IMG/VR virus record: IMGVR_UViG_3300038465_000091
Span: 1-64,000 of that record
DNA: 64,000 nt
Strand: one strand, 5' to 3'
Both the position numbers and the translations under genes were made by a program. Position 1 is the first letter of the stretch, and each line of letters starts with the position of its first letter. Of this stretch, positions 8,215 to 60,310 are shown piece after piece. The notes under the pieces were generated by a model. That model saw nothing but the letters and a program-made list of their open reading frames with translations. It was not told the DNA's origin and searched no databases.

Positions 8215-11200
8215 TTACGCAAGGGTCACCTGCTTCAGGAATTCCTCCGGCACGTGGTCGAGCTTCTTTCCCGTCACAGTCACGACCTTACCGCCGATCT
8301 TGATATTGACGGTGTTCGGCCCCCTGCCTAGAGCTTCCTTGAGTTGCCGCTGAAGTTCCGCGTTGGTCTGCACCTCATCGATCAATTCGTAGATGGGCTC
8401 GGTCCCGTGTAACTCTGCCAAAATCTTCGGTAGGTTAGCGACAGCCTCAGCGTGCTTTTCAGCTTCAGCTTTGTCCTTGGCGGCACGCTCGGATTCCATC
8501 TCCCGCATGGTCTCCGCATTCATTCTATGAGCAACCTCGGCGATGGCAGCCTGATCTATCGTTGCGGGGATCGTAGCAGTGATCTCATTCTCCGATACAG
8601 TGATGAGCGGAAGCTCGGCTTGGACTTCTTCACCGAGGATGAGCAGCGTCGGACGGATAACCTTCGCATCCAACGGAATCGCCCCTGAGTATCCGAACGA
8701 CGGCATCATGCCGCGATCTTTCGCAGTAAGGCCGACACGTTGCTCGTACTGTTCCAACGTTTCCATCGTGGCATCCTGTCCATCAGGCACGTGGTCAATC
8801 GTCCAGTATTCATGCAACTGAAGAATGGCGATCAGAATGCGCTGGGTTTCCTTGGGGTTCTTCGCCTTATCGAGAGCGTTGATCGTTTCGTACACGTCCG
8901 TATCGTGCACGCGACCGACAGCCCGTGGATGCAGGTTCTCTATCATCCAAGCCTTGACTTTTCCAACTTTGATCGGATCGCCCGATGTCAGGGAGTTGAG
9001 CATAGCCTTGACAGACTTGGAGTCAAACAGGTCGGGCAGGTATCTCTCCATGCCTTCGACGTGCGTCCAAGCGTAGGCTTTCTTCGGGTCCGTAGCGTTC
9101 CAGTCAACATCCCAGCTATGCCCGTATTCCGCATCGCACTCAATCGGCACGGGCCACTTCATCTGCTCGTGGTACTTGCGGAGCTTCATGAGGCGGGTGA
9201 CACGCGGCAGAATGAACGGGACGTACTCGTTCTTCACCGAGAAATCAACTTCGTCGTGCACCGACGTATGCAGACGGAACACCGACTGTATCAACGGGTC
9301 GCTTTCCACCCACTTACGGAGGCGGTTCAATGCAATACGCATGAAGTCTCCGCAGATGCCTTGAATGGGAGCGTTGACGGCGATACGTTGGACCTTGCCG
9401 ATGAACTTGTTGTACTCCATCGCGTTGCGGACGCCCGAATCAGGGTCTTTCCACAGGCGGTCGGCGCGACCTTTATACTTCTGGTAATCCGCGTCGTTCC
9501 CCGCCTTCTTTGCCTGCTCCGCTTCGCGGTTGTTTCCATAGTATTCGTAAAGGTTATGACGTTCTTCGTCAAACGGCTTGTGCAGGTGCAGGGCTTCCAA
9601 TGCCGAGTTGAAGTTGATGACGCGACCCGTCGAGGTTTCGCAAATCATCTCGGTCTTCGCCTTCGTCTGTTTCATCTGCACGAACTCGGCAAACTTAGGC
9701 ACGCCTTCCCAATATTTATCCACCATCTTCTTGCAATCTTCCTTGGTGATATTGGGGTCTTTTTCCTTCATGTTGAGGTAGATGGCGTGCTCAGTGCCGC
9801 CATACAGGAGGGCGAAGTTGATGATCTTAGCGATATCGCGGAAGCCCTTCTTCTTGTCGGCTGAAGTGTTCGGGTCGTTGAATTCGGGGAAGACGTTGGA
9901 CGCAGTTAGGGTGTGGAAATCGCCCTTGCCCTTAAGGAATTCGTCAATGAACTTTGGCTCACCGCTCATGTTGGCGGCGGCTCGCATCTCGATGTTCGAA
10001 TAGTCAACGGAGAACCACGTCCAGCCCGGGGGCGAACACATCAGCACACGCAGGTTGACGACTTCGTTGGCATCCATCTGCGTATCTTTGATGAGGATGC
10101 CGTATTTCTCCGCGCAAGACGTACACTTCGGGACAAGACAGATTGCGTATCCCGTGTACTGCCCGATGTGGTTCTTGATGATGCCTTTGGCTTTCTTGAT
10201 GACACCTTTCTCAAGATGGAAACAGGACGGGTCCAAGTCGGCTTCGGTGTACTCCTCCATCTCATCGAATGGAATTTCATCGGGCGACAGTACGTTGCCG
10301 TGCACACGCCACTGCTTTTCGGGCTCGACCTTCTTGACGCCCTGCGGGTTCATACCGAAGCCGCCGTCTTCCTCGAAGTCCCCGCCTGATGCCGATAGAC
10401 GACCGCCAGCTACCGTGCTCTGTCGCAAGTGAATACGGGCGGACAAGTCCTTCGGGTCATACCGCAGGTTGGCTGGGTGGAGTGCTCCGTACTTCTTGAA
10501 CTCCATAAGGGTCTTAAGGAATTCATCATCTGGATGGTCTTTCACCAAGTCGTCGATGGCATCGCTATCGCAGGACGGGGCTCCAGCCTTCTTTGTCCAG
10601 TGCTCGATCTCGTACCCCTTGACCCCGTATAGAAGCTTCTGCAACTGCGGGCCGCTGCCGGGGTTGAACTTGTCATCCTCGTTGACCTTGCCCTCTTCAT
10701 CAGCGGGCTCCTTAAACCCAGCCTCAAGAGCTAGATTGCGGAGCTTGTTGTACAGACTGTCGAGCAGCCCTTGGTGCCACTTGGCGGTTCGCCCGTGACG
10801 CTCGGTGTCGATCAGGAACCGTTGACGCTCAACGAAGATGATGCTGTCCACCAACTCGTGGTCGATGCGGTGCGGCAGGCGACGGCTACGTGCCAAATCC
10901 TTCATCTTCTGCCACAGGAGCCACGTGCAGATGGCATCACCTGCGGCATACCAAAGAGCAATGTCCGTGGGAACCCATGTGAACGGGGCGTACACGTTCT
11001 TCTTGCCGTGCTTTTTATCCTGTTGGGACAGGGCCTTTATCTCTTCTTCCGTGCAATTGCAGAGAGGCTTCTTGGTCAGCGGGCACACCACGGCTTTGAC
11101 TACGGAGATTTCTTCTATCTCGATCTGCTCGATACCCAGCACGGTCTTGGACAACGCCTTCAAACCACCAGCGGAGCCCGTGTACTTCTGCTTTTTATCA

Positions 11201-11826
11201 CCCAGATCGGCCTTGGGGTCATTGATGTACGCGAGGGACTGCACGTCTTCGAAGTGCGGATAACCGCGTAGATTGATGCCCAGACACAGACGTATGACTT
11301 CGCGGTCAAATTTCGCGTTGTAGAAAATCAGATGGCAGCGGTCGAAGAGGTATTGGAGGATGCGACGTGCGGCTTCACGGGGGACGTTCTTGCCCCTCTC
11401 GTGATTGATCGGAACATAGATGCCCTCAACACCGTCCGCGCTCAAGCAGACACCAGCGATCTCAACCTTGACTTCGTAGGTCAACTCATACGAGCCGTCT
11501 GGTTGCTCCTGCATGTCGATCAGGATTCGAGTATCGAGACCATTGCCTTCGGTGTCTACCGCGAGAGCGGGGGACGTTTCTTTGCCGTATGTGTGGTGAC
11601 GAGACTTGTCCGCGAGCAGATTGTCTACCCACGCTTGAAGGGCTTCTTCCGTATCCAGCAGTTTGAAGGCTTTCTCAGCCATCCACGGCTTCTTGATCTT
11701 CTCAATGTCTAGCTCGCGAAGACGAGCCCGATACATGGAACGGAGATCGGACGGCGGCTTTGGTTTCTTGACCTTCTTGGTCCGCTTGAGCTTGACCTCG
11801 CCCGTGTCCTGTTGAATCTTTGCCAT
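8215..11826 (-). CDS. polA: Family A DNA polymerase with 3'-5' exonuclease and a long C-terminal extension
   Basis: Exo DTE/FYNAKFD/YAAGDA; motif A DYSNIEMR; motif B RDIAKIINFALLYG; NAPIQG; motif C VHDE. Confidence 0.95.
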   Translation of the reverse strand: MAKIQQDTGEVKLKRTKKVKKPKPPSDLRSMYRARLRELDIEKIKKPWMAEKAFKLLDTEEALQAWVDNLLADKSRHHTYGKETSPALAVDTEGNGLDTRILIDMQEQPDGSYELTYEVKVEIAGVCLSADGVEGIYVPINHERGKNVPREAARRILQYLFDRCHLIFYNAKFDREVIRLCLGINLRGYPHFEDVQSLAYINDPKADLGDKKQKYTGSAGGLKALSKTVLGIEQIEIEEISVVKAVVCPLTKKPLCNCTEEEIKALSQQDKKHGKKNVYAPFTWVPTDIALWYAAGDAICTWLLWQKMKDLARSRRLPHRIDHELVDSIIFVERQRFLIDTERHGRTAKWHQGLLDSLYNKLRNLALEAGFKEPADEEGKVNEDDKFNPGSGPQLQKLLYGVKGYEIEHWTKKAGAPSCDSDAIDDLVKDHPDDEFLKTLMEFKKYGALHPANLRYDPKDLSARIHLRQSTVAGGRLSASGGDFEEDGGFGMNPQGVKKVEPEKQWRVHGNVLSPDEIPFDEMEEYTEADLDPSCFHLEKGVIKKAKGIIKNHIGQYTGYAICLVPKCTSCAEKYGILIKDTQMDANEVVNLRVLMCSPPGWTWFSVDYSNIEMRAAANMSGEPKFIDEFLKGKGDFHTLTASNVFPEFNDPNTSADKKKGFRDIAKIINFALLYGGTEHAIYLNMKEKDPNITKEDCKKMVDKYWEGVPKFAEFVQMKQTKAKTEMICETSTGRVINFNSALEALHLHKPFDEERHNLYEYYGNNREAEQAKKAGNDADYQKYKGRADRLWKDPDSGVRNAMEYNKFIGKVQRIAVNAPIQGICGDFMRIALNRLRKWVESDPLIQSVFRLHTSVHDEVDFSVKNEYVPFILPRVTRLMKLRKYHEQMKWPVPIECDAEYGHSWDVDWNATDPKKAYAWTHVEGMERYLPDLFDSKSVKAMLNSLTSGDPIKVGKVKAWMIENLHPRAVGRVHDTDVYETINALDKAKNPKETQRILIAILQLHEYWTIDHVPDGQDATMETLEQYEQRVGLTAKDRGMMPSFGYSGAIPLDAKVIRPTLLILGEEVQAELPLITVSENEITATIPATIDQAAIAEVAHRMNAETMREMESERAAKDKAEAEKHAEAVANLPKILAELHGTEPIYELIDEVQTNAELQRQLKEALGRGPNTVNIKIGGKVVTVTGKKLDHVPEEFLKQVTLA

Positions 11827-12294: not shown

Positions 12295-12975
12295 TTATTC
12301 CTTGTCGTCCAGAATTCGATTTACCGCCTCTTGTCCTAATACTCTCGCCAGACGCATTGCGGCTTTGAAATGTAGCTTTGTCGCTTCTTCGGGTTCGCGG
12401 GCCTTCTTAGCCTCGTCCGCCCCCTTCTCGAAATCGAGAGCACCGAAGTAAACGTGGATGTACTCCACGGCTAACTCGTAATCTTTCGATGTTCTAACAT
12501 CTTTGACAGCGCGAACGAGGAATGGTTCAGACAGATCACTGAAGGTGACCTCTGTTGTGATCTCTTCGTCCTCGTCTTGCTCGATGAGAACATCTGGAAG
12601 TGCGGGGAGTTCGAATTCCTTTTCGATCCATTTGAGGGCCTGCACCCACGTGCATCCGAGGGATTCTTTTACAAAGCGGATGTGATCGTAATAGCCCTTA
12701 CCTGCGGGGCAACCAAAACAGAAGCCATCGTTGGAGCCGCGATAGACCTGAAAAGACGGCGTGGAGTCAGTGCCGTGGAAAGGGCAACTGATTTTATCTC
12801 CCACGTTGCGGACGAAGTGGGCAACTACGTCATCGAACCGAACGTCTTCGCGGATTCGTTCAATTCGCCGGGGATTGATGCCCCGTATGACTCCCGCCCG
12901 ATAAAGTTTATCAGCCGTGCGCTTCTGGAAATCTACATCTTGAACGTCGGGTGCTTCGGTGTATTTGTCTGGCAC
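12295..12975 (-). CDS. CHC2 zinc-finger (primase Zn-binding domain) protein, no TOPRIM domain
   Basis: CPFHGTDSTPSF...CFGC. Start reassigned to GTG 12975 behind SD GAGGG. Confidence 0.85.
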   Translation of the reverse strand: MPDKYTEAPDVQDVDFQKRTADKLYRAGVIRGINPRRIERIREDVRFDDVVAHFVRNVGDKISCPFHGTDSTPSFQVYRGSNDGFCFGCPAGKGYYDHIRFVKESLGCTWVQALKWIEKEFELPALPDVLIEQDEDEEITTEVTFSDLSEPFLVRAVKDVRTSKDYELAVEYIHVYFGALDFEKGADEAKKAREPEEATKLHFKAAMRLARVLGQEAVNRILDDKE

Positions 12976-13129
12976 GCTGCCCTCTGTGTCTAATACCAAA
13001 ATTTTGAGAATAGTCAACCAAAATAAAGGGCTGTGGCGGCACTACTTAAAAATGCAACAGTGCCGTTGTGTTTCGCAACATTGGAAAAATGCACAGAACA
13101 CAGGGGTTACACCGAGATCGGGTTTTATC

Positions 13130-13214
13130 TGTTGCGAATCGCAACAAAATAATTCCGTCGTGTAAATGTAAGATACTGAGGGGTAAGGACTTAGAGTTTG
13201 GCTGTTTAATTGCT
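13130..13214 (+). promoter_or_regulatory. Sigma54-type promoter with upstream palindromic enhancer site
   Basis: TGGCTGTTTAATTGCT gives GG(13200-13201)-N10-GC(13212-13213); perfect palindrome TGTTGCGA-A-TCGCAACA at 13130-13146. Confidence 0.65.
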
Positions 13215-13235
13215 ATAGTAACAGTGGAGGTTATC

Positions 13236-13871
13236 ATGACAGTCATTCTGGTTCTGCTCACGTTCATTCTCTTCCTGCTGATCGATTACTTCAAGAGTCG
13301 CGGCAAGGTTCCTGTTCCCGCCACAGCCTATCAGGTGTCGCGACCGCTCACACCCGCGCTCGTAAACGGCTTCAGTGTGCCGACGAATCTCCTCTACCAC
13401 CCCGCCCACACGTGGGCTCTCAAAGAATCCCCCTCGCTCGTGCGCGTAGGCATGGACGACTTCGCATCCAAGCTGATCGGCAAGATCGATTCGATCACGC
13501 TACCGCAGCGTAACACATGGGTACGACAGGGACAACGGTTCGCCACGGTCACCCGTGATGGTCGCACCGTTGATCTGATTTCGCCGATTGAGGGTATCGT
13601 GACCGATGTCAACTCTGACGCCATTCGCGACCCCGAGGCCGCACGCAAGGACGCCTATAGCGGCTGGCTCATGACTGTGGACTCGCCCGACCAGAAGACA
13701 TGCCTCCGCAACCTGTTCAACGGCAGCATGGCACGATTGTGGATCGAAGAGGCCGTAGATCGCCTGCACCCCGCCATGGCACAGGACGGCGGCGAAGCGT
13801 GCAACGACTTCCTGACAGGGATGGGGAGCAGGGATTGGGAGGCAACTACTCGGGAATTCTTGCTCAACTAA
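13236..13871 (+). CDS. Membrane-anchored glycine cleavage H-like protein lacking the lipoyl lysine
   Basis: SD GGAGG; N-terminal TM helix; YHPAHTW, VRVGMDDFA, SPIEGIV..VN and DAY..GWL are GcvH motifs. Confidence 0.85.
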   Translation: MTVILVLLTFILFLLIDYFKSRGKVPVPATAYQVSRPLTPALVNGFSVPTNLLYHPAHTWALKESPSLVRVGMDDFASKLIGKIDSITLPQRNTWVRQGQRFATVTRDGRTVDLISPIEGIVTDVNSDAIRDPEAARKDAYSGWLMTVDSPDQKTCLRNLFNGSMARLWIEEAVDRLHPAMAQDGGEACNDFLTGMGSRDWEATTREFLLN

Positions 13872-13888
13872 AGATTTTTTCGACCAAC

Positions 13889-13928
13889 CGAGCCTCCTAC
13901 CCCCCAATATATAGGTAGGAGGCTTTTC
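13889..13928 (+). terminator. Intrinsic terminator after the GcvH-like gene
   Basis: AGCCTCCTACC / GGTAGGAGGCT stem followed by TTT. Confidence 0.8.
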
Positions 13929-14059
13929 TCATGGCAAACGACAGCGGTCTGTGGAAACTTGTGGTGTACCCCTTTGTGGCGGGAATTGTGTTCACGGGAG
14001 CGGTGTACGGCGGGGTGCGCTGGTTAATCTATTTCGCGCATCACATTGCTTGGAAATAA

Positions 14060-14135
14060 TGGTGGGAAGGGGGAGAATCGAACTCCCATCTCCTGTTTTT
14101 CAGACAGGCGCTAAGTCCACATCAGCTACCGACCC
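14060..14135 (-). tRNA. tRNA-Phe(GAA)
   Basis: Cloverleaf; anticodon arm CCTGT-CTGAAAA-ACAGG; encoded CCA; two acceptor-stem mismatches. Confidence 0.85.
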
Positions 14136-14154
14136 ATTATGATAGGTGGAATTT

Positions 14155-14231
14155 TGGTGGGAAGGGAGGGATTTGAACCCCCGACGCCAGCCTCTTCAGG
14201 GCTGCGCTCTACCGGGCTGAGCTACCGACCC
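14155..14231 (-). tRNA. tRNA-Phe(GAA)
   Basis: CAGCC-CTGAAGA-GGCTG; encoded CCA; same acceptor mismatches as the neighbouring copy. Confidence 0.87.
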
Positions 14232-14605
14232 ACATGATTACAGGCCCCCGCCCATGACGGCGGGGATGGTAAACAAGTCGAGGATGCGGTAGATGCGGTT
14301 CATAGTTTTAACCTACTGAGTAATCGAAGGACGGGCGGTCAACCGTAGTCAACCCCCGTCCCTCGCGGTAATGCCAGCCTGAAGCCAAAAGGCTCCAGTT
14401 TCCCCTGACAGGGCGAGCGATTCGTAACCGTGAGGTGTCAGCCTCAGAGGTCTTTATCGCCCCTTGTAACTGGCAATTAGAAAAAACCAGCGTCGGGTGG
14501 GACCTCCTAGCTGGCGCAGTCGATGCTTTGTCCCACGGTACTTGAGGAAGGCGTTCTAAACCTGTGCCATTGTCTCGGCTCGGTCATTCTGGCCCCTCCC
14601 CAAAC

Positions 14606-14854
14606 TTAAAATCTTTTCTTTGCTAATTGAACCTTGCGGTTCCGAATCTGCCGCACGCCCTCGGCGCACTGGCAAGCTTTCTGCAAGGCTAAACACGTTC
14701 CACAAAAGGATTCGGAAATCAAAATACTGCTGTTGATTCCCTCTTTGAAGTACGGATTGCAGCTATACTCCATGTTGCACGGTTCCAACTTAGTGCCTTT
14801 CTGATCCGCGTGGTTTTTCACGTTGTTCAGAAAAATACAAGTATCACAACCCAT
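14606..14854 (-). CDS. Possible small Cys-rich hypothetical protein
   Basis: 82-aa ORF with CxxC pairs; no strong RBS seen. Confidence 0.35.
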   Translation of the reverse strand: MGCDTCIFLNNVKNHADQKGTKLEPCNMEYSCNPYFKEGINSSILISESFCGTCLALQKACQCAEGVRQIRNRKVQLAKKRF

Positions 14855-14990
14855 CTTTTCTCTCTTTCAAAGCGTCGGCGGGGCTTTCGCCCCGCCGTTG
14901 GTCGGGGCCACTTGGTTTACGTCCAAGAACGGGGGCGAGACGGCGAACCGTTTACCCTCCACCACTCGGTTTACGTCCGAGAACGTGAAC

Positions 14991-15290
14991 TTATCCGCAG
15001 ATTTCAGGCCCGCAGCTTTCGGCGTTACCCGTGCTCTCGTTGGGCTCGTACACTTTAGCTGCGTAAACGTACTCACCTTCGGCGAAAGGTCCTGCCGAAG
15101 CATTGACCAGCATGTACCCCAGTTTAGCCAATGTGTCGGCGTTTGTCAAGAGGCGCATTTTATTGGTCGTCTGACCGTAATGCGAAGCTTCAACTTCCAA
15201 CACTGGGCGACCCTTTGTATCTGTCGTAACGGCGAATTGCACTCCACCGCCCCCGATCTCCAAAAACACTTCATTCAAAGTCTCGCCCAT
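14991..15290 (-). CDS. Hypothetical protein
   Basis: SD AAAGGA 4 nt before ATG; protein-like composition. Confidence 0.6.
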   Translation of the reverse strand: MGETLNEVFLEIGGGGVQFAVTTDTKGRPVLEVEASHYGQTTNKMRLLTNADTLAKLGYMLVNASAGPFAEGEYVYAAKVYEPNESTGNAESCGPEICG

Positions 15291-15299
15291 ACGATCCTT

Positions 15300-16160
15300 T
15301 CAAAATGCTATTGGGACCTAGCTGCGACTGGCTACGCAGGGTCGTCGGCTCCCGCCGAAGGTCTTGCCTATCAAGCGTCCCAACAGCAATCTTCGCCCCC
15401 ACTGTTCTCGCGGTATTACCGTCCGATTGGATACGGAAGCGTTGCCCCAATTCTTGGGTTACCCGTTCAGGGGGAGCACCCACCCATCAATCTCAAAACT
15501 ATGCGGGCACGAGCTTGGTTAGGCTCCGACCTTCTGCCGTAGTTGCAACGGCCTCCCGATCTTGCTTAGTCGCCGCACAAACTTTCCCAGTCGGCAGGGA
15601 CTCCCGATTCTCCACCCTGCATGACCCCAGTCCCATTTAAGGGACACAGTTGAGCCTGTGCTCGAAGACTGTGCTGACCGCTTGGGTCTCCACGTTCGGA
15701 ATCCCGTCGCAGCGGGAACCCCTTCCAAACGCTTTAGCGTCTCTATTTCTGGATCGTGTCTATTTCCGCCACGACTGGAAAAACGATTGTGGCGGGGGAT
15801 AGCAGCCGTAAAACACGGCCCCACTAGGCTCACGCCCACGTTCTTTTGGTAAATCTCCCTTGAAGAACGATTGCTCATATCTCGTATCGTAGCTCGAACA
15901 GGAGCAGGACACAGAGACACCGCCACAAAATTACTACTCCCATCCGAGGCAGTTCGAACTGCTTGTCGGCGTCGGCTGTAACCAGCGAACGAGCGATTTG
16001 AGCTTACCTTTCGGCAGAGGCTTGCGGAGTTCGTTAAAAGCGGCCTGAGAAGCGATTTCACAGGTTTCACGCCGCACGCTTTTACGTTATGGCGGTTCCC
16101 CGAACAATGACTCCACTCAGGCACAAAGTCAAAGTCCAATGAGGACCTGCTAATCACAGC
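15300..16160 (-). ncRNA. Candidate large structured ncRNA (GOLLD/ROOL size class)
   Basis: About 850 nt with no credible RBS-linked ORF, many short hairpins, inside a tRNA array; family not verified. Confidence 0.35.
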
Positions 16161-16260
16161 CGCTATTACGCGGCAACCTTACTTGTTGTCAGGCGGCTGT
16201 CGGCTTTGGCCCTGAGGATTTACACAGGAGCGACTCACCTATCATGACCTGACAACAAAA

Positions 16261-16340
16261 TGGTTGCAGAGGCTTGGAGTCGCACCAAGTACACCGTTCG
16301 GCTTATGAGGCCGATGAGCCGCAGTTGCTCGATCCCTGCT
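16261..16340 (-). tRNA. Atypical tRNA-Met(CAT)
   Basis: TCGGC-CTCATAA-GCCGA arm; T-loop TGCGACT; encoded CCA; irregular acceptor stem. Confidence 0.6.
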
Positions 16341-16686
16341 TCAAACTTAACAATCCCGCGTGAACCTTGCGATGACAATTCTCACACAGAACCACGCACT
16401 TTGCAATCTCAGCTAAGACTCGTTCTCGACTGAATTGCCTTGCGATTGCGTATGCTATCGTAAATTCTTTCTTGTCCTTGTCCACGTGATGAAATGAAAG
16501 GCAGCAATAAGCCGTTTCAGGACACAACTTGCAGGACAATTTCAAAGACTGGAAGAGCTTTCGTATCTCCTCCTTGTACCGTTTCTTTCGCTGGCTAACC
16601 AGCCGCTTGTGCTCCGCTCTGTACACGGGATCGTTGTTGTAACGATCTCGAAGGTACTTTGCGTGTTTTGCAGGGGTAGTAGGCAC
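16303..16686 (-). CDS. HNH endonuclease (tRNA-array family)
   Basis: CKLC...LSFHH...KCVVLCENCHRKVH. GTG start 6 nt after TGTGGTATACT. Confidence 0.88.
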   Translation of the reverse strand: MPTTPAKHAKYLRDRYNNDPVYRAEHKRLVSQRKKRYKEEIRKLFQSLKLSCKLCPETAYCCLSFHHVDKDKKEFTIAYAIARQFSRERVLAEIAKCVVLCENCHRKVHAGLLSLKQGSSNCGSSAS

Positions 16687-16776
16687 CCTACAAGTATACC
16701 ACAGCCGCAACTCGATCCCCGGGAGACGCTAGGCGACTCCACTTGCAAGGCGCGTGCGCCTCACTGGGGAAACCTT

Positions 16777-16853
<77 letters not shown>

Positions 16854-17162
16854 TCAAAATTATACAGCGGCCTGAGCCCACATCCACCTTCTACGGGGCT
16901 AACCCCCTCGGGCGACTGCGATGCATCCCGAACCCAAGCCGACTTCCCTACCGAGGCAATGGATGAATGCCCCTTCACTAAAATGGGCTGAACGAATGGT
17001 CAGGGTTTTTTACTGTTTAAGGTCGCCCGCCAGCCCGCTGTTGGCCGACCCCCTTTACTGCCATTTACACAGCAAGGGTAGCCTGTCCTCCGTGGTCTAC
17101 CAGCGTACCACGATACTCGACAAGGTACAACTATCTGGGAATCCTTGTCAATCGCCGTGCTA

Positions 17163-17495
17163 CTAAACTTCTCGCAACATGCTCTGCAATTGCTCGGCCA
17201 ACTCTTTCGCCTGATCGCGGCTCACATAAACCGTGCCCGAATCCCCGCAATCCATGCGGATGCCGATCACGTTGGGCTCGTCGCCATCAGCCATCAACCA
17301 AATGTGGTCGGTTGCGTTGCCGTTCAAGCGCAATGTCTTATCCAGTGCAATAGCCATACGGCCTCCAGAAAGAAAAAACCTCGGCAAGTGCACTCCCCCG
17401 TTTCGACCCGCTGGGTACTTATTCCCCAGAAGGGAGAGGCACGACGACCAAACAGAGTCGGGCACCACGTCGGCTGTCATCCGGGAGTCGGGCAT
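17163..17495 (-). CDS. Hypothetical protein
   Basis: ORF; an internal start MAIALD with SD GGAGG is also possible. Confidence 0.5.
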   Translation of the reverse strand: MPDSRMTADVVPDSVWSSCLSLLGNKYPAGRNGGVHLPRFFLSGGRMAIALDKTLRLNGNATDHIWLMADGDEPNVIGIRMDCGDSGTVYVSRDQAKELAEQLQSMLREV

Positions 17496-17652
17496 ATCCG
17501 CAAAGCCCCAACTCCCTTGAACCTGCTTGTTAGCGTCCCGCAGCGGAGCGGGTGCCGAGGCACATCAGGGCATGGTCGCAACTGTCGCCAAATTGAGCCG
17601 CCTGTAATTGCCGGCGGCACCCTCATTACAATAATACGCTAGTTTCAAAAGA

Positions 17653-17967
17653 TTATCTACCTTCAACTTTATCGCGCCGACGAAATTCAGCTTGCGTCCA
17701 CGATTGGCGAAGCGCCTTACGGCGTTTATGAGCACAAGAAAAATACTTTGCCGAGTGGCACTGACGACAGCCGCAGTTGAGGTTGAACTTTGCGTAGCGA
17801 CCCCACTCCGTGGGTGTGTACCACCCCATTTGCTGCTGGTAAAACGGAGAACCCTCGTGCGGCTCCTCGTTGTAGTGGGTCCAAATTTTCGTCGCGATGA
17901 ACTTGCGACGGGCGATTACACGTTCGCGCTGGTGACGACGTTCGTCACGAGACGTTGGATGAGACAT
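17653..17967 (-). CDS. Basic hypothetical protein with CGCRQC motif
   Basis: SD GGAG upstream of ATG 17967. Confidence 0.6.
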   Translation of the reverse strand: MSHPTSRDERRHQRERVIARRKFIATKIWTHYNEEPHEGSPFYQQQMGWYTPTEWGRYAKFNLNCGCRQCHSAKYFSCAHKRRKALRQSWTQAEFRRRDKVEGR

Positions 17968-18307
17968 GGCTTTCACTCCCCGACCGCTCACACCTTATGC
18001 GGTATGTGCGGTCTTGCTAGGGTTAGTAGCCATCTGCTCGTCCTCCTGTGAATTGAATTGTCGGGTATCCGATACTGTGTTTGGGCAGTTAGTAGCCAGA
18101 TGCTTTTGGCCCTATAGCCTCGGAAGGGTCCGCAGACTCCCGACTTCCCTAAATTTCGGCGGCGTTTCAGCCGCCAGCACTGCATAACCAAAACCGAGCG
18201 CGGTGCACCGCCTCGGCTGGATATTCAAAGAACGGGTGCGTCTGTTCTGCACAAACTTGTGGGGCTTTCCCCATCCGGCTCGAAGCCTACGGGTCTTAAA
18301 CCTACGC

Positions 18308-18383
18308 TTTAGCGTGGTGGGATTCGAACCCACGTCCTTCCCCGTCAATAGGGGTTGCCGATCCGCTGGGCGTCACGCTAAAG
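18308..18383 (-). tRNA. Degenerate tRNA-like gene (loop TATTGAC, nominal anticodon TTG)
   Basis: Perfect acceptor TAGCGTG/CACGCTA and GTGGG-TTCGAAT-CCCAC T-arm; A33; no encoded CCA. Confidence 0.5.
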
Positions 18384-18511
18384 AACCTTTGGTGGATGGT
18401 TCGCTTGGGTCGCTTTCGCGTCTTTCCGCCTTTTGGCTCCCAACATCCCCGCCCCTGCTGTTAACACGACTGTACGTGACTGCTTACGCTATCAGGGCAT
18501 CCACCAAAAAT

Positions 18512-18589
18512 TGGTGCCGGATGCTGGGATCGAACCAGCGGCCTTCGGCTTATGAGACCGACGCTCTGAGCCAACTGAGCTAATCCGGC
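18512..18589 (-). tRNA. tRNA-Met or Ile2 (CAT)
   Basis: Canonical cloverleaf; TCGGT-CTCATAA-GCCGA; CCA. Met versus Ile2 cannot be resolved by eye. Confidence 0.9.
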
Positions 18590-18648
18590 TAAACGTCGGG
18601 GAATCGGTGACCGACTCCCCAGTTCCTCCCACACGTGGTGGGTGAATC

Positions 18649-18816
18649 TTAAAAATTCAACTTACTCGCCAGAATCTCAGGTCGAATTACAACTTTCGAC
18701 CAATCTGGTTGTTCGAACCATTCGGGGTGCTCGTAATAGTTACGGAGATGACTATGGATTGGAAGACCTTCATTATCTAGTATGCCAAATCCCGTCTCAT
18801 CAGTATCTTGCGGCAT
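18649..18816 (-). CDS. Small hypothetical protein (55 aa)
   Basis: Below the ORF-track cutoff; SD AAGGAG; begins MPQDTDETGFGILDNEGLP. Confidence 0.6.
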   Translation of the reverse strand: MPQDTDETGFGILDNEGLPIHSHLRNYYEHPEWFEQPDWSKVVIRPEILASKLNF

Positions 18817-18825
18817 TCAATCTCC

Positions 18826-19176
18826 TTAAAAGTCTGGAAAGAACGCGGTTGCTTTCTTTGCTTTGGGTGCCGCCTCAGCGGTATCTTCCGAAAGCTCGAT
18901 CTGCCCCTGTTCTCTCACGACTTCATCATACGGCTTACTGTTAATCTGAGCAAGCTCTGTTTCAAAACCACTATACAAGTTGCTGCCCGATGCCAGCTTG
19001 GTGAGGTGAGCGACCTCGCGTTCAGCGTCGGCCTTCTCTTCCAAAGTCACTGGGCTCTCGGCCAACCACACGTCGATGAACGATAGCTCGCCCTTCTCAG
19101 CGGCTTTCTTCCACGGGTCATAGGTCTTTACGTCAACCTTCTCGTGACCCTCTACGCCTACACGAATCTTTGACAT
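18826..19176 (-). CDS. Hypothetical protein
   Basis: Start reassigned to MSKIRVG behind TATTAG and SD GAGG. Confidence 0.65.
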   Translation of the reverse strand: MSKIRVGVEGHEKVDVKTYDPWKKAAEKGELSFIDVWLAESPVTLEEKADAEREVAHLTKLASGSNLYSGFETELAQINSKPYDEVVREQGQIELSEDTAEAAPKAKKATAFFPDF

Positions 19177-19279
19177 GGCGGTCCTCTGTCTAATAGGTTT
19201 GATATTCACCAAGTGCCTATAGGACGATACTGCTTTCGTTGGAAAAGAGCCGCGAGTTTTCGCAAAAACCACATAAATT

Positions 19280-19354
19280 TGGTCGGGGAGGCGAGATTCG
19301 AACTCGCGATCCCATGCTCCCGAAGCATGTGCGTTACCGCTACGCTACTCCCCG
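19280..19354 (-). tRNA. tRNA-Pro(CGG)
   Basis: CATGC-TTCGGGA-GCATG; CGGGGAG acceptor; CCA. Confidence 0.92.
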
Positions 19355-19358
19355 AAAT

Positions 19359-19531
19359 TGGTTGCAGGGCTGGGAGTCGAATTGAACCCAGCATCTCTCG
19401 GATCGCTGCTCAGCGTCTTGCGTCAACGTTGCTCGTCTATTTCCTTGCGGATCACCGTCTCACATCAACTTGCCAGCGCAACGACCCCGCGCACTTTCGT
19501 GCGGGATGTTCTGCCATTTGAACTACCTGCA
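19359..19531 (-). ncRNA. tRNA-framed RNA with a ~100-nt insert in place of the anticodon arm
   Basis: Acceptor TGCAGG/CCTGCA-A-CCA, D-arm GTTC..GAAC and T-arm GCTGGG/CCCAGC flank a long structured insert. Confidence 0.6.
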
Positions 19532-19565
19532 AACTCTTGCCGCCAGTCTTGCTACACGTGGCGGG

Positions 19566-19769
19566 TTACCCCACCTTACTCGAAAAACTTTTCTTGAACT
19601 CTTCAACGACGACTTCGAGGCTATGTCTTGCTTCCGCCTCATCCGCGCCATAACCTACGAGTTCTGCACCGTTGTGGTGCCCGAACTCGTTGAAGAAGAA
19701 AGGAAGTTCAACCCTCGCTTCATAGCTGTCGTGCTTCTCTTTGCCATCGTTGATGATTTTTGCATCCAT
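19566..19769 (-). CDS. Small protein, possible HicB-like N-terminal fold
   Basis: YEARV...LVGYGADEAEARHSL resembles the HicB G-x-T/D-x-x-EA pattern. Confidence 0.45.
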   Translation of the reverse strand: MDAKIINDGKEKHDSYEARVELPFFFNEFGHHNGAELVGYGADEAEARHSLEVVVEEFKKSFSSKVG

Positions 19770-20026
19770 AAAATTCCGATGGCGTATGAAGTGAGCATTG
19801 ATCCTTGGCTGAGCACCATCAACACCGTTTGCAAAATCTTGGGGCGACCTAAGCTGGCACTGGTACTTGCGTGGTCTCCAGCCATCGACGTATTATGCAC
19901 AGCCTGCGACCGAGTACCCGGCGACCTCGCAGACCGCTCCACCCCGTTCTTCGATACCTGCCTGATCCCACGTTGCAGACTTTCGTCTGTGCGAGTCAGC
20001 CCTCGGGCGGGGCACTTTCAAAACTT

Positions 20027-20116
20027 TGGTCAGGATGAGAGGATTTGAACCTCCAAGGTCATAAAGACACCTGCATCCGAGGCAGGACGGCTGCCAAGTT
20101 ACCGTTCTACACCCTG
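20027..20116 (-). tRNA. tRNA-Pro(CGG) with enlarged variable arm
   Basis: CCTGC-CTCGGAT-GCAGG; ~15-nt variable region; CCA. Confidence 0.85.
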
Positions 20117-20129
20117 ACATTGTAAAATT

Positions 20130-20216
20130 TGGTCGGGGTGGGGAGATTCGAACTCCCAGTGATCTTATCTCCCGCTTCCAAAGCGGGTCGGCTCCCAACT
20201 ACCGATTTACACCCCG
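20130..20216 (-). tRNA. tRNA-Pro(TGG) with enlarged variable region
   Basis: CCCGC-TTTGGAA-GCGGG; ~13-nt variable region; CCA. Confidence 0.87.
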
Positions 20217-20342
20217 ATTATGCGTTTTTCCGCCTAAAAGCGTTTTATACGGAAAACCGCCTAAAGCACAAAATCGAGGCAAATGTCTTGGAATTCAGTT
20301 GCTTACAGCGCCCCGATGCCTAGCAGCACGGGGTTGAGGCTC

Positions 20343-20414
20343 TTAGAGCACTTCACCCCCGCGCACGGTAGGCGTGCACGGTCGAAACATCGGGGTTGGT
20401 CGCATTGTGTTCAT
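20343..20414 (-). promoter_or_regulatory. Leader peptide ORF of the Pro/Met/Phe tRNA array (MNTMRPTPMFRPCTPTVRGGEVL)
   Basis: 23 codons with 4 Pro, 3 Met, 1 Phe (also 4 Thr, 3 Arg), lying between the promoter and the first tRNA-Pro. Confidence 0.6.
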
Positions 20415-20534
20415 AAAGTCGTCCCGATTCGTGCCCAGAGCCGTAGCTAAACTACAGATGCTCACGAATCGTAAGATTGGTGTGGGGCACGAGTTTCCAC
20501 CGTTCTGTAATCTGCGCCCTTCCCAATCTCTACT

Positions 20535-20568
20535 ATAATACCATGGAAGTTTGAATTTTAGTTAGGAA
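20535..20568 (-). promoter_or_regulatory. Phage promoter TTCCTAAC-N20-TATTAT
   Basis: Fixed-spacing motif shared with six other loci. Confidence 0.7.
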
Positions 20569-20758
20569 AATCGAAATTTATTTCCAAGGCACGGGGTCAT
20601 GGGCGTTCAGTTGTTCGCGGCGGTCCATAAGCTCCTGCCTTCGCGGTTCGTGTATTTCGGCTGCACGCCATCTACGATCAGCGGCTCCCGCGTGCCCTCC
20701 ACAACGACGTTCTTCCGACCCGTCCAAACTCTAGTCTTGGCGGATTTCTTCACGGCTT

Positions 20759-21325
20759 TCACAGTTCATCCTCCACGATTTGCGGCGAGGCGTTGTCAAA
20801 ACCGCCAGCACACGACTCACATTCCTGCCGCTTGGTCTTGCCGTGCTTGCACATCGGTTCAGCAGTTCCCAGTCCGTAAAACTGCCGTACTTCCATCAGC
20901 AGCCTACCGAGCCAATTCTCGCCGAGGGGTGCATGAGGAAAATCACACTTGCCCATGCACACGCCCCAGAACGTGTCGTGCCAGTGATTGCCTTCGATCA
21001 ACTCGGCTTGAAACGTGGAGATCAGCTTGCGCTTGGGAATGCTCGGCCTGAACTTCTGCATGAGCAGATCGCGCATGATACCGATCTTGACTTCTTCCCA
21101 GTCGGGACGTAGCTTCAAGGACCGTCCCATCCTCTTTGCTCTCGCGGACGTTACGCCGAGGTAACGGAACTTCTCACGTTGCGCTGCATCGAGCGTCTTT
21201 GCCGCTTGGTATGCATGTTCAACCGAGGTATACACCTCAACCATGGCGTCGGGCATCTCATGGGCGTAAATCATCCCATCGGTGGTGACCCATAGCCGAA
21301 CTTCGCCGAGTGCGAAGTTAGACAA
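20759..21325 (-). CDS. NADAR (YbiA/DUF1768) family protein
   Basis: FLSNF, SVEHAYQAAK, NHWHDTFWG, GENWLGRLLMEVR. The reading frame stays open upstream to about 21373. Confidence 0.9.
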   Translation of the reverse strand: MSNFALGEVRLWVTTDGMIYAHEMPDAMVEVYTSVEHAYQAAKTLDAAQREKFRYLGVTSARAKRMGRSLKLRPDWEEVKIGIMRDLLMQKFRPSIPKRKLISTFQAELIEGNHWHDTFWGVCMGKCDFPHAPLGENWLGRLLMEVRQFYGLGTAEPMCKHGKTKRQECESCAGGFDNASPQIVEDEL

Positions 21326-21369
21326 GAAAGCCCAAGCTCCGGTAAAACTATCGATTTTGGTTGGGAGTT

Positions 21370-23506: not shown

Positions 23507-23512
23507 GTGGTT

Positions 23513-23546
23513 ATTCTACCATGAAGGGAGAGGATTTGGTTAGGAA
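23513..23546 (-). promoter_or_regulatory. Phage promoter TTCCTAAC-N20-TAGAAT
   Basis: Fixed-spacing motif upstream of the small-gene run. Confidence 0.7.
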
Positions 23547-23636
23547 ATCGTGGTAAGTAACCGTTTTTGTTTACAATACGTTGGAGTCTGGGAATGACAG
23601 TTCGGACAATACTAAATGGTTTGGAAGTTCAAATTT

Positions 23637-23722
23637 TGGTGTCCGAAGGGGGACTTGAACCCCCACGACCTTGCGGTCACTGGCTCCTAAGGCCAGCGCG
23701 TCTGCCATTCCACCACTCGGAC
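23637..23722 (-). tRNA. tRNA-Leu(TAG)
   Basis: Class II cloverleaf; loop CTTAGGA; CCA. Confidence 0.95.
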
Positions 23723-23727
23723 AAATT

Positions 23728-23812
23728 TGGTGCGGCTAAGAGGAGTCGAACCTCCACGGGGTTGCCCCACTAGGGCTTGAGCCTAGCGCGTCTGCCATTC
23801 CGCCATAACCGC
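23728..23812 (-). tRNA. tRNA-Leu(CAA)
   Basis: Class II; loop CTCAAGC; CCA. Confidence 0.95.
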
Positions 23813-23921
23813 ATAATCAGCACCTTTGTACCGATTAAGCCTGTAAACCGTTGTAAGCGGCATATTTCCACTCCCGTCGCCATTTTGCGCTGAACAGTGA
23901 ATATAGCCTTTCGAGTAAATA

Positions 23922-24007
23922 TGGTGCCGCCGACAGGGATCGAACCTGCATGGCTGTAAACCACTGGATTCTGAGTCCAGCCTGTCTGCCAATTCCAGCA
24001 CGGCGGC
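23922..24007 (-). tRNA. tRNA-Leu(CAG)
   Basis: Class II; loop CTCAGAA; CCA. Confidence 0.95.
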
Positions 24008-24014
24008 AAAATTT

Positions 24015-24099
24015 TGGTGTGGCCGGAGGGACTTGAACCCTCACACCTTTCGGCATCACCCCCTCAAGATGACGTGTCTGCCAATTCCACCACGGCCAC
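24015..24099 (-). tRNA. tRNA-Leu(GAG)
   Basis: Class II; loop TTGAGGG; CCA. Confidence 0.93.
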
Positions 24100-24200
24100 A
24101 TACCGTTTCACCATCCGATGAAACCCCTCGAAACAGTGAAACTCGCGATATGCTTTATTGCATCAAACCGCCGACCTGATGTAATAAAGCACATCAAATT

Positions 24201-24290
24201 TGGTGTGCCTAAGAGGACTTGAACCTCCACGGGGGTATCAGCCCCAACGGACTCTCAGCCCGCCGCGTCTGCCAGTTTCGCCATAGACAC
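24201..24290 (-). tRNA. tRNA-Leu(GAG), second variant
   Basis: Class II; GCGGG-CTGAGAG-TCCGT; CCA. Confidence 0.85.
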
Positions 24291-24295
24291 AAATC

Positions 24296-24383
24296 TGGTG
24301 CCGGGAGCAGGATTCGAACCTGCGAACCTCCTAAGAGGGACTGCTTTACAGGCAGTTGGTTTTAACCGCTCACCCATCCCGGC
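24296..24383 (-). tRNA. tRNA-Tyr(GTA)
   Basis: ACTGC-CTGTAAA-GCAGT; long variable arm; CCA. Confidence 0.95.
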
Positions 24384-60283: not shown

Positions 60284-60294
60284 ACGGGTACGCC
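60219..60294 (-). tRNA. tRNA-Glu(TTC)
   Basis: TTCGC-CTTTCAA-GCGAA; CCA. Confidence 0.92.
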
Positions 60295-60310
60295 ATTGGA
60301 CTTCTAAAAT

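What the first reader, a model, noticed from the sequence alone, without database searches (positions are those of the whole stretch)
13021..13928. Captured host cassette: sigma54 promoter, enhancer palindromes, non-lipoylatable membrane GcvH-like gene and terminator
This self-contained plus-strand unit sits in a minus-strand region. It has a -24/-12 promoter, a perfect 17-bp palindrome (13130-13146) and a degenerate copy near 13064-13080. The protein has a TM anchor, and alignment to ESVKAASDIYAP puts Gly at the lipoyl-Lys position (TRDGRTVDLISP). Such membrane GcvH-like proteins occur in redox gene clusters of Acidobacteria and deltaproteobacteria (from memory). The phage copy would respond to a host enhancer-binding protein.
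Basis: partly seen in the sequence, partly recalled or inferred. Interest (0 to 1): 0.6.

Follow-up and report, generated by a model that had tools for sequence, protein, structure and literature searches.

The report
Phage gene wired to host sigma-54
A giant soil phage of Acidobacteria carries a host-derived membrane protein gene (a glycine-cleavage-H look-alike that cannot carry lipoate) together with the host's own sigma-54 promoter and activator-binding sites, so the phage copy is probably switched on by a host signalling system, and it is transcribed in peat.

Summary
Window 13064-13925 is a single plus-strand unit between a minus-strand primase and minus-strand tRNAs. It has two 17-bp dyads (13064-13080, 13130-13146), a GG-N10-GC sigma-54 promoter (13199-13214), an SD, a 211-aa CDS (13236-13871) and a 12-bp-stem terminator.

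The protein has an N-terminal TM helix, a GcvH fold and a ~50-aa C-terminal extension. Gly109 sits at the lipoyl-Lys position. That position is Gly in 84 of 85 bacterial and 25 of 29 phage-clade relatives, and never Lys.

Homologues at 51-58% identity occur in at least 465 species genomes; the best 80 are all Terriglobia. About 77 of those 80 have a sigma-54 promoter. The dyad TGTTGC-N5-GCAWCA is about 270-fold enriched upstream of them. In 43 of 80 loci an operon encoding a NrfC-like protein, a NrfD-like protein, a sensor kinase and an NtrC-type activator lies nearby.

Eight distinct phage loci keep the promoter and the short 36-38 bp promoter-to-ATG spacing; six of them keep a recognisable dyad. 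dN/dS is 0.11. The phage record shows no RpoN or activator.

Four peat metatranscriptomes hold 100%-identical contigs over the gene. One starts at 13225, the predicted start site.

Protein function and RpoN dependence remain inferred. Verdict: a new variant of host-regulated phage auxiliary genes.

The parts
13064..13080 (+). Distal activator-binding dyad CGTTGTGTTTCGCAACA (10 of 12 half-site positions). Its centre is 128 bp upstream of the -24 GG.
   Evidence: The distance matches the proximal dyad of bacterial homologues (125-134 bp; 47 sites). It is conserved in L086.
13130..13146 (+). Proximal activator-binding site: the perfect 17-bp palindrome TGTTGCGAATCGCAACA (6-N5-6). Its centre is 62 bp upstream of the GG and about 87 bp upstream of the start site.
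   Evidence: It is the only 12/12 match in the 223.5-kb phage record. A dyad (9-12 of 12) is kept at 61-62 bp upstream of the GG in window/L085, L086, L087 and L088, and at about the same place in L103 and L106 (centres -100 and -98 from the ATG), while the surrounding sequence has diverged.
13199..13214 (+). Sigma-54 -24/-12 promoter TGGCTGTTTAATTGCT (GG at 13200-13201, GC at 13212-13213).
   Evidence: GG-N10-GC is kept at -36 to -38 from the ATG in 8 distinct phage loci. It is kept at -64 to -91 in about 77 of 80 bacterial homologues.
13225..13225 (+). Predicted transcription start, 12 nt after the -12 C. This gives a leader of about 11 nt.
   Evidence: Geometry of sigma-54 promoters (established knowledge). 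In one search, an RNA-library contig of run X13 begins at 13225 directly after adapter letters.
13226..13230 (+). Shine-Dalgarno GGAGG, 5 nt before the ATG.
   Evidence: invariant in four phage loci.
13236..13871 (+). CDS of 211 aa. Residues 2-21 form a TM helix. Residues about 46-163 form a GcvH-fold domain with Gly109 (13560-13562) at the lipoyl-Lys position. Residues 164-211 form a helical extension with an invariant AQDGG motif.
   Evidence: dN/dS is 0.11 against L086. RNA contigs cover 13225-13817.
13890..13929 (+). Intrinsic terminator: 12-bp stem, 12-nt loop, then UUUU.
   Evidence: dG -21.2, z -4.64. It is kept in L106 and absent in L086.
13931..14059 (+). 42-aa hydrophobic small ORF on the same strand, after the terminator. 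It may be a second small gene of the unit.
   Evidence: It is 37/42 identical in L106, and the segment is 92% identical in DNA. It is absent in L086. No RNA contig covers it.

Best explanation
An ancestor of this Terriglobia-infecting jumbo-phage group captured a single-gene, sigma-54-dependent transcription unit from a Terriglobia-like host. It took the promoter and the upstream activator sites along with the gene.

In the bacteria, the gene is the conserved target of an NtrC-type activator. That activator is paired with a sensor kinase whose periplasmic part carries a CxxCH haem-c motif. Both are often encoded next to a NrfC/NrfD-like membrane iron-sulfur/quinone module.

The product is tethered to the cytoplasmic face of the membrane by one N-terminal helix. 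It has a GcvH fold without the lipoyl lysine. It therefore most likely works as a non-catalytic partner or adaptor of that membrane redox module, or of its signalling system, rather than as a lipoate carrier.

In the phage the unit has been compacted. The leader is about 11 nt instead of about 45 nt, a structured 5' hairpin is lost, and one activator site is moved to -87. The gene is still read by host RNA polymerase with RpoN, and only when the host's activator is phosphorylated. The phage thereby makes extra copies of this protein under the same envelope or redox signal that induces the host gene.

Shown here: the anatomy, the homology of gene, promoter and sites, purifying selection, and transcription in peat. 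Inferred: RpoN and activator dependence, membrane topology, the partner and the benefit to the phage.
For: Fold and missing Lys:
- GcvH fold with TMt 0.84-0.91 and rmsd 1.6-1.8 A.
- Gly109 aligns with the lipoyl Lys.
- That position is Gly in 84/85 bacterial and 25/29 phage-clade rows and never Lys. The next position is variable.

Host origin:
- The best 80 of at least 465 species-genome hits are all Terriglobia.
- The phage-type clade of 29 rows is split from them with SH-aLRT 99-100 and lies beside them when rooted on paralogues.
- The polymerase's best isolate hit is Tunturiibacter phage Tunturi_5, at 44.9% identity over 86%.

Regulatory homology:
- The sigma-54 element is present in about 77/80 bacterial loci and in 8 distinct phage loci.
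- 76 of 121 dyad hits in 947 kb lie within -350 to -150 of the gene: 13.4 per kb in the peak bin against 0.049 per kb background.
- Dyad distances from the GG cluster at 125-134, 225-234 and 250-259 bp. The phage's distal site is at 128 bp.

Regulator:
- The NrfC-like / NrfD-like / kinase / REC-AAA-HTH_8 activator operon lies beside the gene in 43/80 loci.
- All 5 tested carrier genomes have RpoN.
- The phage record has no activator, RpoN or NrfD match.

Selection and expression:
- dN/dS is 0.11.
- Four metatranscriptomes hold 100%-identical contigs over the gene. None covers the upstream 780 bp. One contig starts at 13225.

Partner:
- The predicted complex of the bacterial protein with the NrfD-like and NrfC-like proteins scored 0.60, with a best control of 0.00. 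The tool calls this weak support. The mark is reached by 58 of 80 solved complexes and 2 of 110 mismatched pairs. At 0.60 or under, it is reached by only 7 of those 80 solved complexes and by both mismatches.
- The three runs agree in at least 50% of contacts and the partner's pLDDT is at least 71.
Against: - No experiment shows RpoN or activator dependence.
- The window's -24/-12 element is a weaker match to the family consensus (11 of 19 positions) than L088's (19 of 19).
- An 11-nt leader that starts at the SD is unusually short.
- The RNA evidence is from assembled contigs, which the tool says cannot prove a start. Only one contig gives 13225.
- 37 of 80 bacterial loci lack the kinase/activator operon within 6 kb, so the cognate activator is assigned by neighbourhood only.
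- The phage's real host, and whether it has this activator, is unknown.
- The phage record is about 71% complete, so a phage activator or RpoN in the missing part cannot be excluded.
- The complex prediction is weak, and it was run on bacterial proteins, not the phage protein.
- In sub-clades L089/L090 and L104/L105 the dyad has changed, and in L089/L090 the promoter match is poor.
Confidence: 0.72

Rival explanations
1. The protein is a feedback modulator of the host two-component system, not a redox-module subunit. It would be a small membrane-anchored target of the system that binds the kinase or the activator, in the manner of MgrB-PhoQ or PspA-PspF. The phage copy would then damp or lock the host's response during infection. 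The phage's high-affinity palindrome could also titrate the activator.
For: - It is a single-gene regulon target with a multi-site enhancer beside the kinase/activator genes.
- It has no cofactor-binding residues and no conserved Cys.
- The phage evolved a perfect palindrome closer to the promoter.
- 37 of 80 loci have the gene without the NrfC/NrfD operon nearby.
Against: - The one interaction test gave a pass, although weak, with the NrfD/NrfC-like pair. The score fell to 0.00 when the NrfD-like chain was replaced.
- No test with the kinase was possible.
- A decoy role alone would not explain purifying selection on the protein.
Confidence: 0.15
2. The sigma-54-like motif and the palindromes in the phage are inherited relics. 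The gene would really be transcribed by a phage-directed or sigma-70-type promoter as part of the phage programme.
For: - A weak sigma-70-like match lies at 13210-13237.
- Relatives such as Tunturi_5 encode their own sigma factor next to the primase.
- RNA contigs of two runs begin at 13238 and 13246.
Against: - The sigma-70-like site would start transcription downstream of the ATG.
- The -24 TGG, the -12 TTGC, the dyad core and the SD are the invariant islands in otherwise diverged upstream regions of phages whose proteins are only 64-92% identical.
- Neighbouring phage genes are not co-covered in RNA libraries.
Confidence: 0.08
3. The protein still carries a swinging-arm cofactor on another residue, for example the Lys or Arg one position after the canonical site or the invariant Lys79. 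It would then act as a true carrier for the membrane redox module.
For: - Many bacterial members have Lys at position 110 (30 of 85).
- Lys79 is invariant.
- GcvH-like carriers work outside glycine cleavage, for example the GcvH-L of S. pyogenes (PDB 5a35) that appears.
Against: - Position 110 is Arg in this phage and varies widely in bacteria (A, T, V, C, H, S, Q and others).
- From general knowledge, shifting the target Lys by one position in lipoyl domains abolishes lipoylation.
Confidence: 0.05

Closest known systems
Cyanophage auxiliary genes (pstS and others) controlled by the host PhoR/PhoB two-component system through Pho boxes (PMC10976474 and the work it cites)
   Same: A host-derived or host-regulated phage gene keeps binding sites for a host response regulator. 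Its expression therefore follows a host environmental signal.
   Different: Here the circuit is sigma-54 plus an AAA+ enhancer-binding activator with remote 17-bp dyads, not a sigma-70 promoter with Pho boxes. The host is soil or peat Terriglobia, the phage is a jumbo phage, and the gene's function is unknown. No binding or induction experiment exists.
Glycine cleavage system H protein (GcvH, PF01597; e.g. PDB 3hgb, 1onl, 3a8i)
   Same: The same barrel-sandwich fold with a hairpin tip (TMt 0.84-0.91). The HxW and SP...G motifs are kept.
   Different: There is no lipoyl Lys (Gly109). It has an N-terminal TM helix and a 50-aa C-terminal extension. It scores far below the NCBIfam GcvH cut-offs (66.9 against 117, and 50.3 against 115.85). 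It is not next to gcvT or gcvP.
NtrC-type sigma-54 enhancers (e.g. glnAp2 with NtrC sites; general knowledge)
   Same: GG-N10-GC promoter. Multiple 17-bp 6-N5-6 dyads lie about 80-280 bp upstream. The neighbouring activator has a REC-AAA+-HTH_8 architecture.
   Different: The half-site sequence is TGTTGC/GCAACA. The kinase is a HAMP kinase with a periplasmic CxxCH motif. The regulon target is this membrane protein.
Tunturiibacter phage Tunturi_5 (309-kb jumbo myovirus of Acidobacteriaceae; PMC11924767)
   Same: It is the closest isolated relative by DNA polymerase (44.9% identity). It has the same primase-polymerase module, many tRNA genes and a large genome.
   Different: No match to the GcvH-like protein was found in Tunturi_5 by tblastn at E <= 1e-5. 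A sigma-factor gene sits beside its primase.

Membership tests
GcvH (glycine cleavage H protein, functional carrier) | GcvH barrel-sandwich fold | tested here: met
   Pfam GCV_H at E 9.4e-17. Foldseek matches 3hgb/1onl/3a8i with TMt 0.84-0.91.
GcvH (glycine cleavage H protein, functional carrier) | Lipoyl-lysine at the hairpin tip (ES.KA motif) | tested here: not met
   Gly109 aligns with the Lys. The position is Gly or Asp in 114/114 close relatives.
GcvH (glycine cleavage H protein, functional carrier) | Reaches the curated equivalog score | tested here: not met
   TIGR00527 scores 50.3 bits against a cut-off of 115.85. NF002270 scores 66.9 against 117.
GcvH (glycine cleavage H protein, functional carrier) | Gene context with gcvT/gcvP | tested here: not met
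   None of the conserved neighbour clusters that were annotated is a glycine-cleavage protein. The phage context is primase and tRNAs.
Sigma-54-dependent promoter with enhancer | GG-N10-GC (-24/-12) element at a fixed distance from the gene, conserved in orthologues | tested here: met
   Present in about 77/80 bacterial loci at -64 to -91 and in 8 phage loci at -36 to -38.
Sigma-54-dependent promoter with enhancer | Upstream dyad sites for an enhancer-binding protein | tested here: met
   The dyad TGTTGC-N5-GCAWCA is about 270-fold enriched upstream, at fixed distances. The phage sites are at 62 and 128 bp from the GG.
Sigma-54-dependent promoter with enhancer | RpoN and a cognate AAA+ activator available in the cell | tested here: inconclusive
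   RpoN is present in 5/5 carrier genomes. An activator gene is adjacent in 43/80 loci. The actual host of this phage is unknown.
Sigma-54-dependent promoter with enhancer | Transcription start about 12 nt after the -12 element, and dependence on rpoN | tested here: inconclusive
   One RNA-library contig starts at 13225, as predicted. Dependence on rpoN cannot be tested with these tools.
Phage auxiliary gene of host origin under host regulation | Located in a bona fide phage genome, repeatedly | tested here: met
   The window is part of a 223.5-kb virus record. The gene occurs in syntenic contigs L086, L103, L104 and L106, and in other phage contexts L088/L091, L090 and L105.
Phage auxiliary gene of host origin under host regulation | Phylogeny shows derivation from the host family, and selection maintains it | tested here: met
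   The phage-type clade lies beside the Terriglobia clade and inside the paralogue outgroups. dN/dS is 0.11. The direction of transfer is inferred from the wide bacterial distribution.
Subunit or partner of a NrfC/NrfD-type membrane module | Physical association with the NrfD-like/NrfC-like pair | tested here: inconclusive
   Neighbourhood in 43/80 loci. Predicted complex 0.60 against a best control of 0.00, rated weak support: 58/80 solved and 2/110 mismatched pairs reach the mark, but at 0.60 or under only 7 of those solved ones and both mismatches do.

The most novel reading that the evidence does not exclude
A lineage of jumbo phages uses the host's sigma-54/enhancer-binding-protein circuit, driven by a haem-containing periplasmic redox sensor kinase, as its own environmental sensor. 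Through it the phage makes a lipoate-free GcvH-fold subunit that plugs into a previously undescribed NrfC/NrfD-like membrane redox complex of Terriglobia. This would retune respiratory or quinone electron flow during infection in peat. As far as I know and as far as the paper searches showed, it would be the first sigma-54-dependent phage gene and the first function for membrane-anchored, Lys-less GcvH proteins.
Probability: 0.3. Interest if true: 0.8.

Novelty: new variant of a known kind. Interest (0 to 1): 0.62.

Why it matters
Phage genes that keep host regulator sites are known mainly from marine cyanophages (Pho boxes). This case extends the idea in three ways. The control is sigma-54/enhancer-dependent. 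That type of control is strictly signal-gated and needs a host ATPase activator. The host group, Acidobacteriota, is abundant in soil and peat but poorly studied.

The case also defines a large, uncharacterised bacterial family. It is found in at least 465 species genomes among those scanned, and in 13% of a phylum-wide sample. The family has a clear regulon architecture: promoter, three or four dyads, a structured leader, and a neighbouring kinase/activator and NrfC/NrfD-like module.

This gives concrete handles for experiments on redox sensing in Terriglobia. The in-situ transcripts show that the phage copy is active in peat.

Tried and rejected
- Window-only statistics for the -24/-12 pattern were not significant (4 matches against 2.4 expected). 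In the whole phage record, dyads at 10 of 12 or better are not enriched (12 found on both strands together, against about 8 per strand in shuffles). The case therefore rests on comparative data, not on counts within the phage.
- No second sigma-54/enhancer unit was found in the phage. The perfect -24/-12 match at 24894-24908 (minus strand) has no dyad nearby.
- The simple terminator scanner missed the hairpin. Folding showed it.
- No terminator is conserved in L086, L087 or L090, so the terminator is not a fixed part of the cassette.
- A divergent sigma-54 promoter for the NrfC-like operon was sought and not found.
- Rfam gave nothing in 12900-16500 except the tRNAs.
- RNAalifold on the bacterial leaders predicted only a 3-bp SD hairpin. 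A hand-drawn 8-bp hairpin got moderate support.
- Paper searches for GcvH-like with sigma-54 or Acidobacteria, for NrfD with GcvH, and for phage-encoded sigma-54 systems found nothing relevant.
- The Atlas look-up added only 'GcvH family, Acidobacteriota'.
- The isolated-phage collection holds no family member, only distant canonical gcvH hits at 24-31% identity.
- One paralogue (L095) was mistranslated by my script and should be ignored.
- The large representative protein search was not used.
Full report
**What the window is.** The window is the first 64 kb of a 223.5-kb IMG/VR virus record that CheckV rates about 71% complete. It holds 27 tRNA genes, all on the minus strand. It also holds a 1203-aa family-A DNA polymerase (8215-11826, minus) and a primase-like ORF (12295-13017, minus).

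The polymerase's only strong hit among isolated phages is Tunturiibacter phage Tunturi_5. That is a 309-kb jumbo myovirus of an Acidobacteriaceae host, hit at 44.9% identity over 86% of the protein (PMC11924767). The DNA is found in peat and permafrost metagenomes from many studies.

**The observation.** The described unit is real.

- The CDS runs from 13236 to 13871 on the plus strand (211 aa). GGAGG lies at 13226-13230.
- Upstream lie TGGCTGTTTAATTGC (13199-13213, an exact GG-N10-GC), the perfect palindrome TGTTGCGAATCGCAACA (13130-13146) and a copy with three mismatches (13064-13080).
- Downstream, 13890-13925 folds into a 12-bp perfect stem followed by UUUUCUC (dG -21.2 kcal/mol, z -4.64).
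- The flanking genes are on the minus strand.

Within the window alone the promoter pattern is not significant (4 matches against 2.4 expected). The evidence that matters is comparative.

**The protein.**

- Pfam assigns GCV_H (E 9.4e-17, residues 53-163). The scores are far below the curated GcvH cut-offs of NCBIfam.
- An AF2 model (pLDDT 85) shows a helix at residues 2-21 and a poorly ordered linker. It shows a GcvH domain that superposes on solved H-proteins (TMt 0.84-0.91, rmsd 1.6-1.8 A). It also shows a helical C-terminal extension.
- Positive residues follow the helix (K20, R22, K24) and none precede it. By the positive-inside rule the domain should face the cytoplasm. This is an inference.
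- HMMER aligns VTRDGRTVDLISP with VESTKSVSDLYAP, so Gly109 replaces the lipoyl Lys.
- In 85 bacterial and 29 phage-clade relatives this position is Gly (109 rows) or Asp (5 rows), never Lys. The next position is Lys in only 30 of 85 bacterial rows and is Arg here.
- Arg107 and the C-terminal AQDGG motif are invariant. No Cys is conserved.

**Where the family lives.**

- The word-based search found 3474 relatives.
- In one-genome-per-species contigs, at least 465 stretches encode a relative. The best 80 (51-58% identity) are all Terriglobia/Acidobacteriaceae, Sulfotelmatobacter or Korobacter.
- In an even sample of 201 Acidobacteriota genomes, 27 have a full-length match at E <= 1e-30. Some genomes have two paralogues.
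- No bacterial genome hit exceeds 58% identity.
- All sequences at 58-100% identity lie on viral or unbinned contigs. The ten examined look viral by gene content:
  - The cassette sits beside the primase-polymerase module in L086, L103, L104 and L106.
  - It sits elsewhere in the 332-kb phage L088/L091, in the 183-kb contig of P0020 (which has thymidine-hypermodification genes), and in L105.
- In trees, these 29 rows form one clade (SH-aLRT 99-100). Rooted on paralogues, the clade lies next to the main Terriglobia clade.
- dN/dS between the window and L086 is 0.11.
- No match was found in Tunturi_5, which has a sigma-factor gene beside its primase instead.

The simplest reading is one old capture from a Terriglobia-like host, followed by vertical descent and some movement within a phage group. 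The direction of transfer is inferred from the much wider bacterial distribution.

**Regulatory signals are shared with the hosts.**

- About 77 of 80 bacterial loci have a GG-N10-GC element with consensus TTGGCAYGGCGATTGCCTT. The GG lies 64-91 nt before the ATG.
- The dyad TGTTGC-N5-GCAWCA (at least 10 of 12) occurs 121 times in 947 kb of these loci. 76 of those hits lie between -350 and -150 of the gene: 13.4 per kb in the peak bin against 0.049 per kb elsewhere.
- Measured from the GG, dyad centres cluster at 125-134, 225-234, 250-259 and about 385 bp.
- In the phages the GG is 36-38 nt from the ATG in eight distinct loci. A dyad lies 61-62 bp upstream of the GG in the four loci measured that way (window/L085, L086, L087, L088), and at about the same place in L103 and L106. 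A second dyad lies at 128 bp (window, L086) or about 150 bp (L087, L088).
- In an alignment of four phage upstream regions, the invariant islands are the -24 TGG, the -12 ATTGC, the dyad core, the SD and the ATG. The rest has diverged.

The window's 'degenerate copy' thus sits where the bacterial proximal site sits. The perfect palindrome is a phage-specific closer site. The 6-N5-6, 17-bp layout is that of NtrC-type sites (general knowledge). Two sub-clades have changed repeats (L104/L105), or changed repeats and a poor -12 match (L089/L090).

**Who would bind.** In 43 of 80 bacterial loci an opposite-strand operon lies within 6 kb. It encodes:

- a NrfC-like 4Fe-4S protein with no Tat signal and a C-terminal TM helix;
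- a NrfD-like membrane protein;
- a HAMP histidine kinase;
- a REC-AAA+(Sigma54_activat)-HTH_8 response regulator.

The operon is divergent, with 420-630 bp between it and the gene, in 25 loci. It lies downstream in about 16 loci. The kinase's periplasmic part has a CxxCH motif, which suggests a haem-c sensor. No minus-strand sigma-54 promoter was seen for that operon. All five carrier genomes tested have RpoN. The phage record has no match to the sigma-54 activator domain, the RpoN DNA-binding domain or NrfD, although it is incomplete.

**Expression.** Four peat metatranscriptomes from four studies hold contigs 100% identical to the gene: 13238-13817, 13246-13816, 13225-13366 with 13481-13631, and 13361-13631. 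None covers 12440-13224.

One contig begins at 13225 immediately after adapter letters. That is the position expected for a sigma-54 start, 12 nt after the -12 C at 13213. The leader would be about 11 nt and would begin at the SD.

There are caveats. The tool warns that contigs cannot prove starts or strand and that DNA can be present in RNA libraries. The patchy coverage argues for RNA. Bacterial homologues are too different to be the source.

**Differences between the phage and host units.** Bacterial leaders are about 45 nt and begin with a hairpin (GAGYGRCC...GGYCRCTC). 74% of cells are paired, against 27-47% when the partners are slid. The covariation score is reached by 1 of 500 shuffles. 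The phage copies lack this leader. They also lack an 8-9-residue insert before AQDGG and have a shorter linker.

The terminator and a 42-aa hydrophobic ORF (13931-14059) are shared with L106 at 92% DNA identity. They are absent from L086, where a tRNA follows the stop codon.

**Mechanism.**

- Best supported: host RNA polymerase with RpoN reads the phage promoter when the host's NtrC-type activator, bound at 13130-13146 and 13064-13080, is activated by its kinase.
- What the protein does is open. One test, a predicted complex of the bacterial protein with the NrfD-like and NrfC-like neighbours, scored 0.60 with a best control of 0.00. The tool rates this as weak support:
  - 58 of 80 solved complexes and 2 of 110 mismatched pairs reach the mark.
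  - At 0.60 or under, only 7 of those solved ones and both mismatches do.
  - The runs agree in at least 50% of contacts, and the partner's pLDDT is at least 71.
- I therefore favour a non-catalytic partner of that membrane redox module. A feedback role on the signalling system is the main rival.

**Comparison and novelty.** The nearest known case is cyanophage genes controlled by the host PhoR/PhoB system through Pho boxes (PMC10976474). The present case differs in promoter class (sigma-54 with remote enhancer sites), host phylum, phage type and gene. My paper searches found no description of this protein family, of its regulon or of a sigma-54-dependent phage gene. That last point also rests on my own knowledge and is not proof of absence.

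I rate it a new variant of a known kind. It is not a functional GcvH.

Noticed in passing
window 14212-14593: A stretch just beyond the two tRNA-Phe genes is covered by 100%-identical contigs in all four metatranscriptomes. Its reported contig depth is the highest in the 4 kb laid, though the tool warns that contig depth cannot rank genes. It has no Rfam match and no convincing ORF. It folds well on the minus strand (z -3.5). Only a 45-bp piece is conserved in L086. It may be a phage non-coding RNA or a tRNA-array leader.
   Followed up: partly
window 14060-24383 and 60219-63775: There are 27 tRNA genes in 64 kb, all on the minus strand, including duplicates (2 Phe, 3 Met, 5 Leu, 4 Ala). This resembles the 43 tRNAs reported for Tunturi_5.
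   Followed up: no
L005-L084, about 45 nt before each homologue's ATG (alignment A8): Bacterial leaders start with a conserved hairpin. Its 3' arm (CTCC/CTCG) could alternatively pair with the SD (GAGG), giving a possible translational switch or a 5' stabiliser. Support from pair counts is moderate. The hairpin is absent from all phage copies.
   Followed up: partly
L058:1740-3419 (minus) and homologues: The neighbouring histidine kinase has a CxxCH motif (ACYACH), and a second Cys-His pair, in its periplasmic part. This suggests a covalently bound haem sensor.
   Followed up: no
L014:4605-5372 (minus) and 29 homologues: The NrfC-like iron-sulfur protein starts directly with MSKALLYD..CIGC, so it has no Tat signal. 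It ends in a TM helix. No catalytic subunit gene was among the conserved neighbours that were annotated. This would be a two-subunit NrfC/NrfD-like module with a cytoplasmic iron-sulfur domain.
   Followed up: partly
window 13931-14059: A 42-aa hydrophobic ORF lies right after the terminator. It is 37/42 identical in L106. The terminator-plus-ORF segment is 92% identical in DNA, more than the neighbouring gene (79% at the protein level). It is missing in the closer relative L086. It may be a small mobile module.
   Followed up: partly
L089 and L090, 100 nt before the gene: This phage sub-clade has replaced the dyad by repeats of CGTTGTAWWTC. It has only a poor -12 match (CGGCCNTCGNCGCGC at the same -36 position). 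The regulator or its specificity may have changed.
   Followed up: no
L104:8430-8726 (minus): A phage contig syntenic with the window encodes a 98-aa c-type cytochrome (PF13442/PF00034) 2 kb from the cassette. This is another possible redox gene in these phages.
   Followed up: no
L090:2249-3538 and the 183-kb contig of P0020: ADDT and HMUDK_hel domain genes (thymidine hypermodification) lie near the cassette in another carrier phage.
   Followed up: no
window 24894-24908 (minus): A consensus-perfect TGGCACACATATTGC lies about 500 nt upstream of the tRNA-Tyr/Leu array on the same strand. No dyad is nearby, so it is probably chance.
   Followed up: partly
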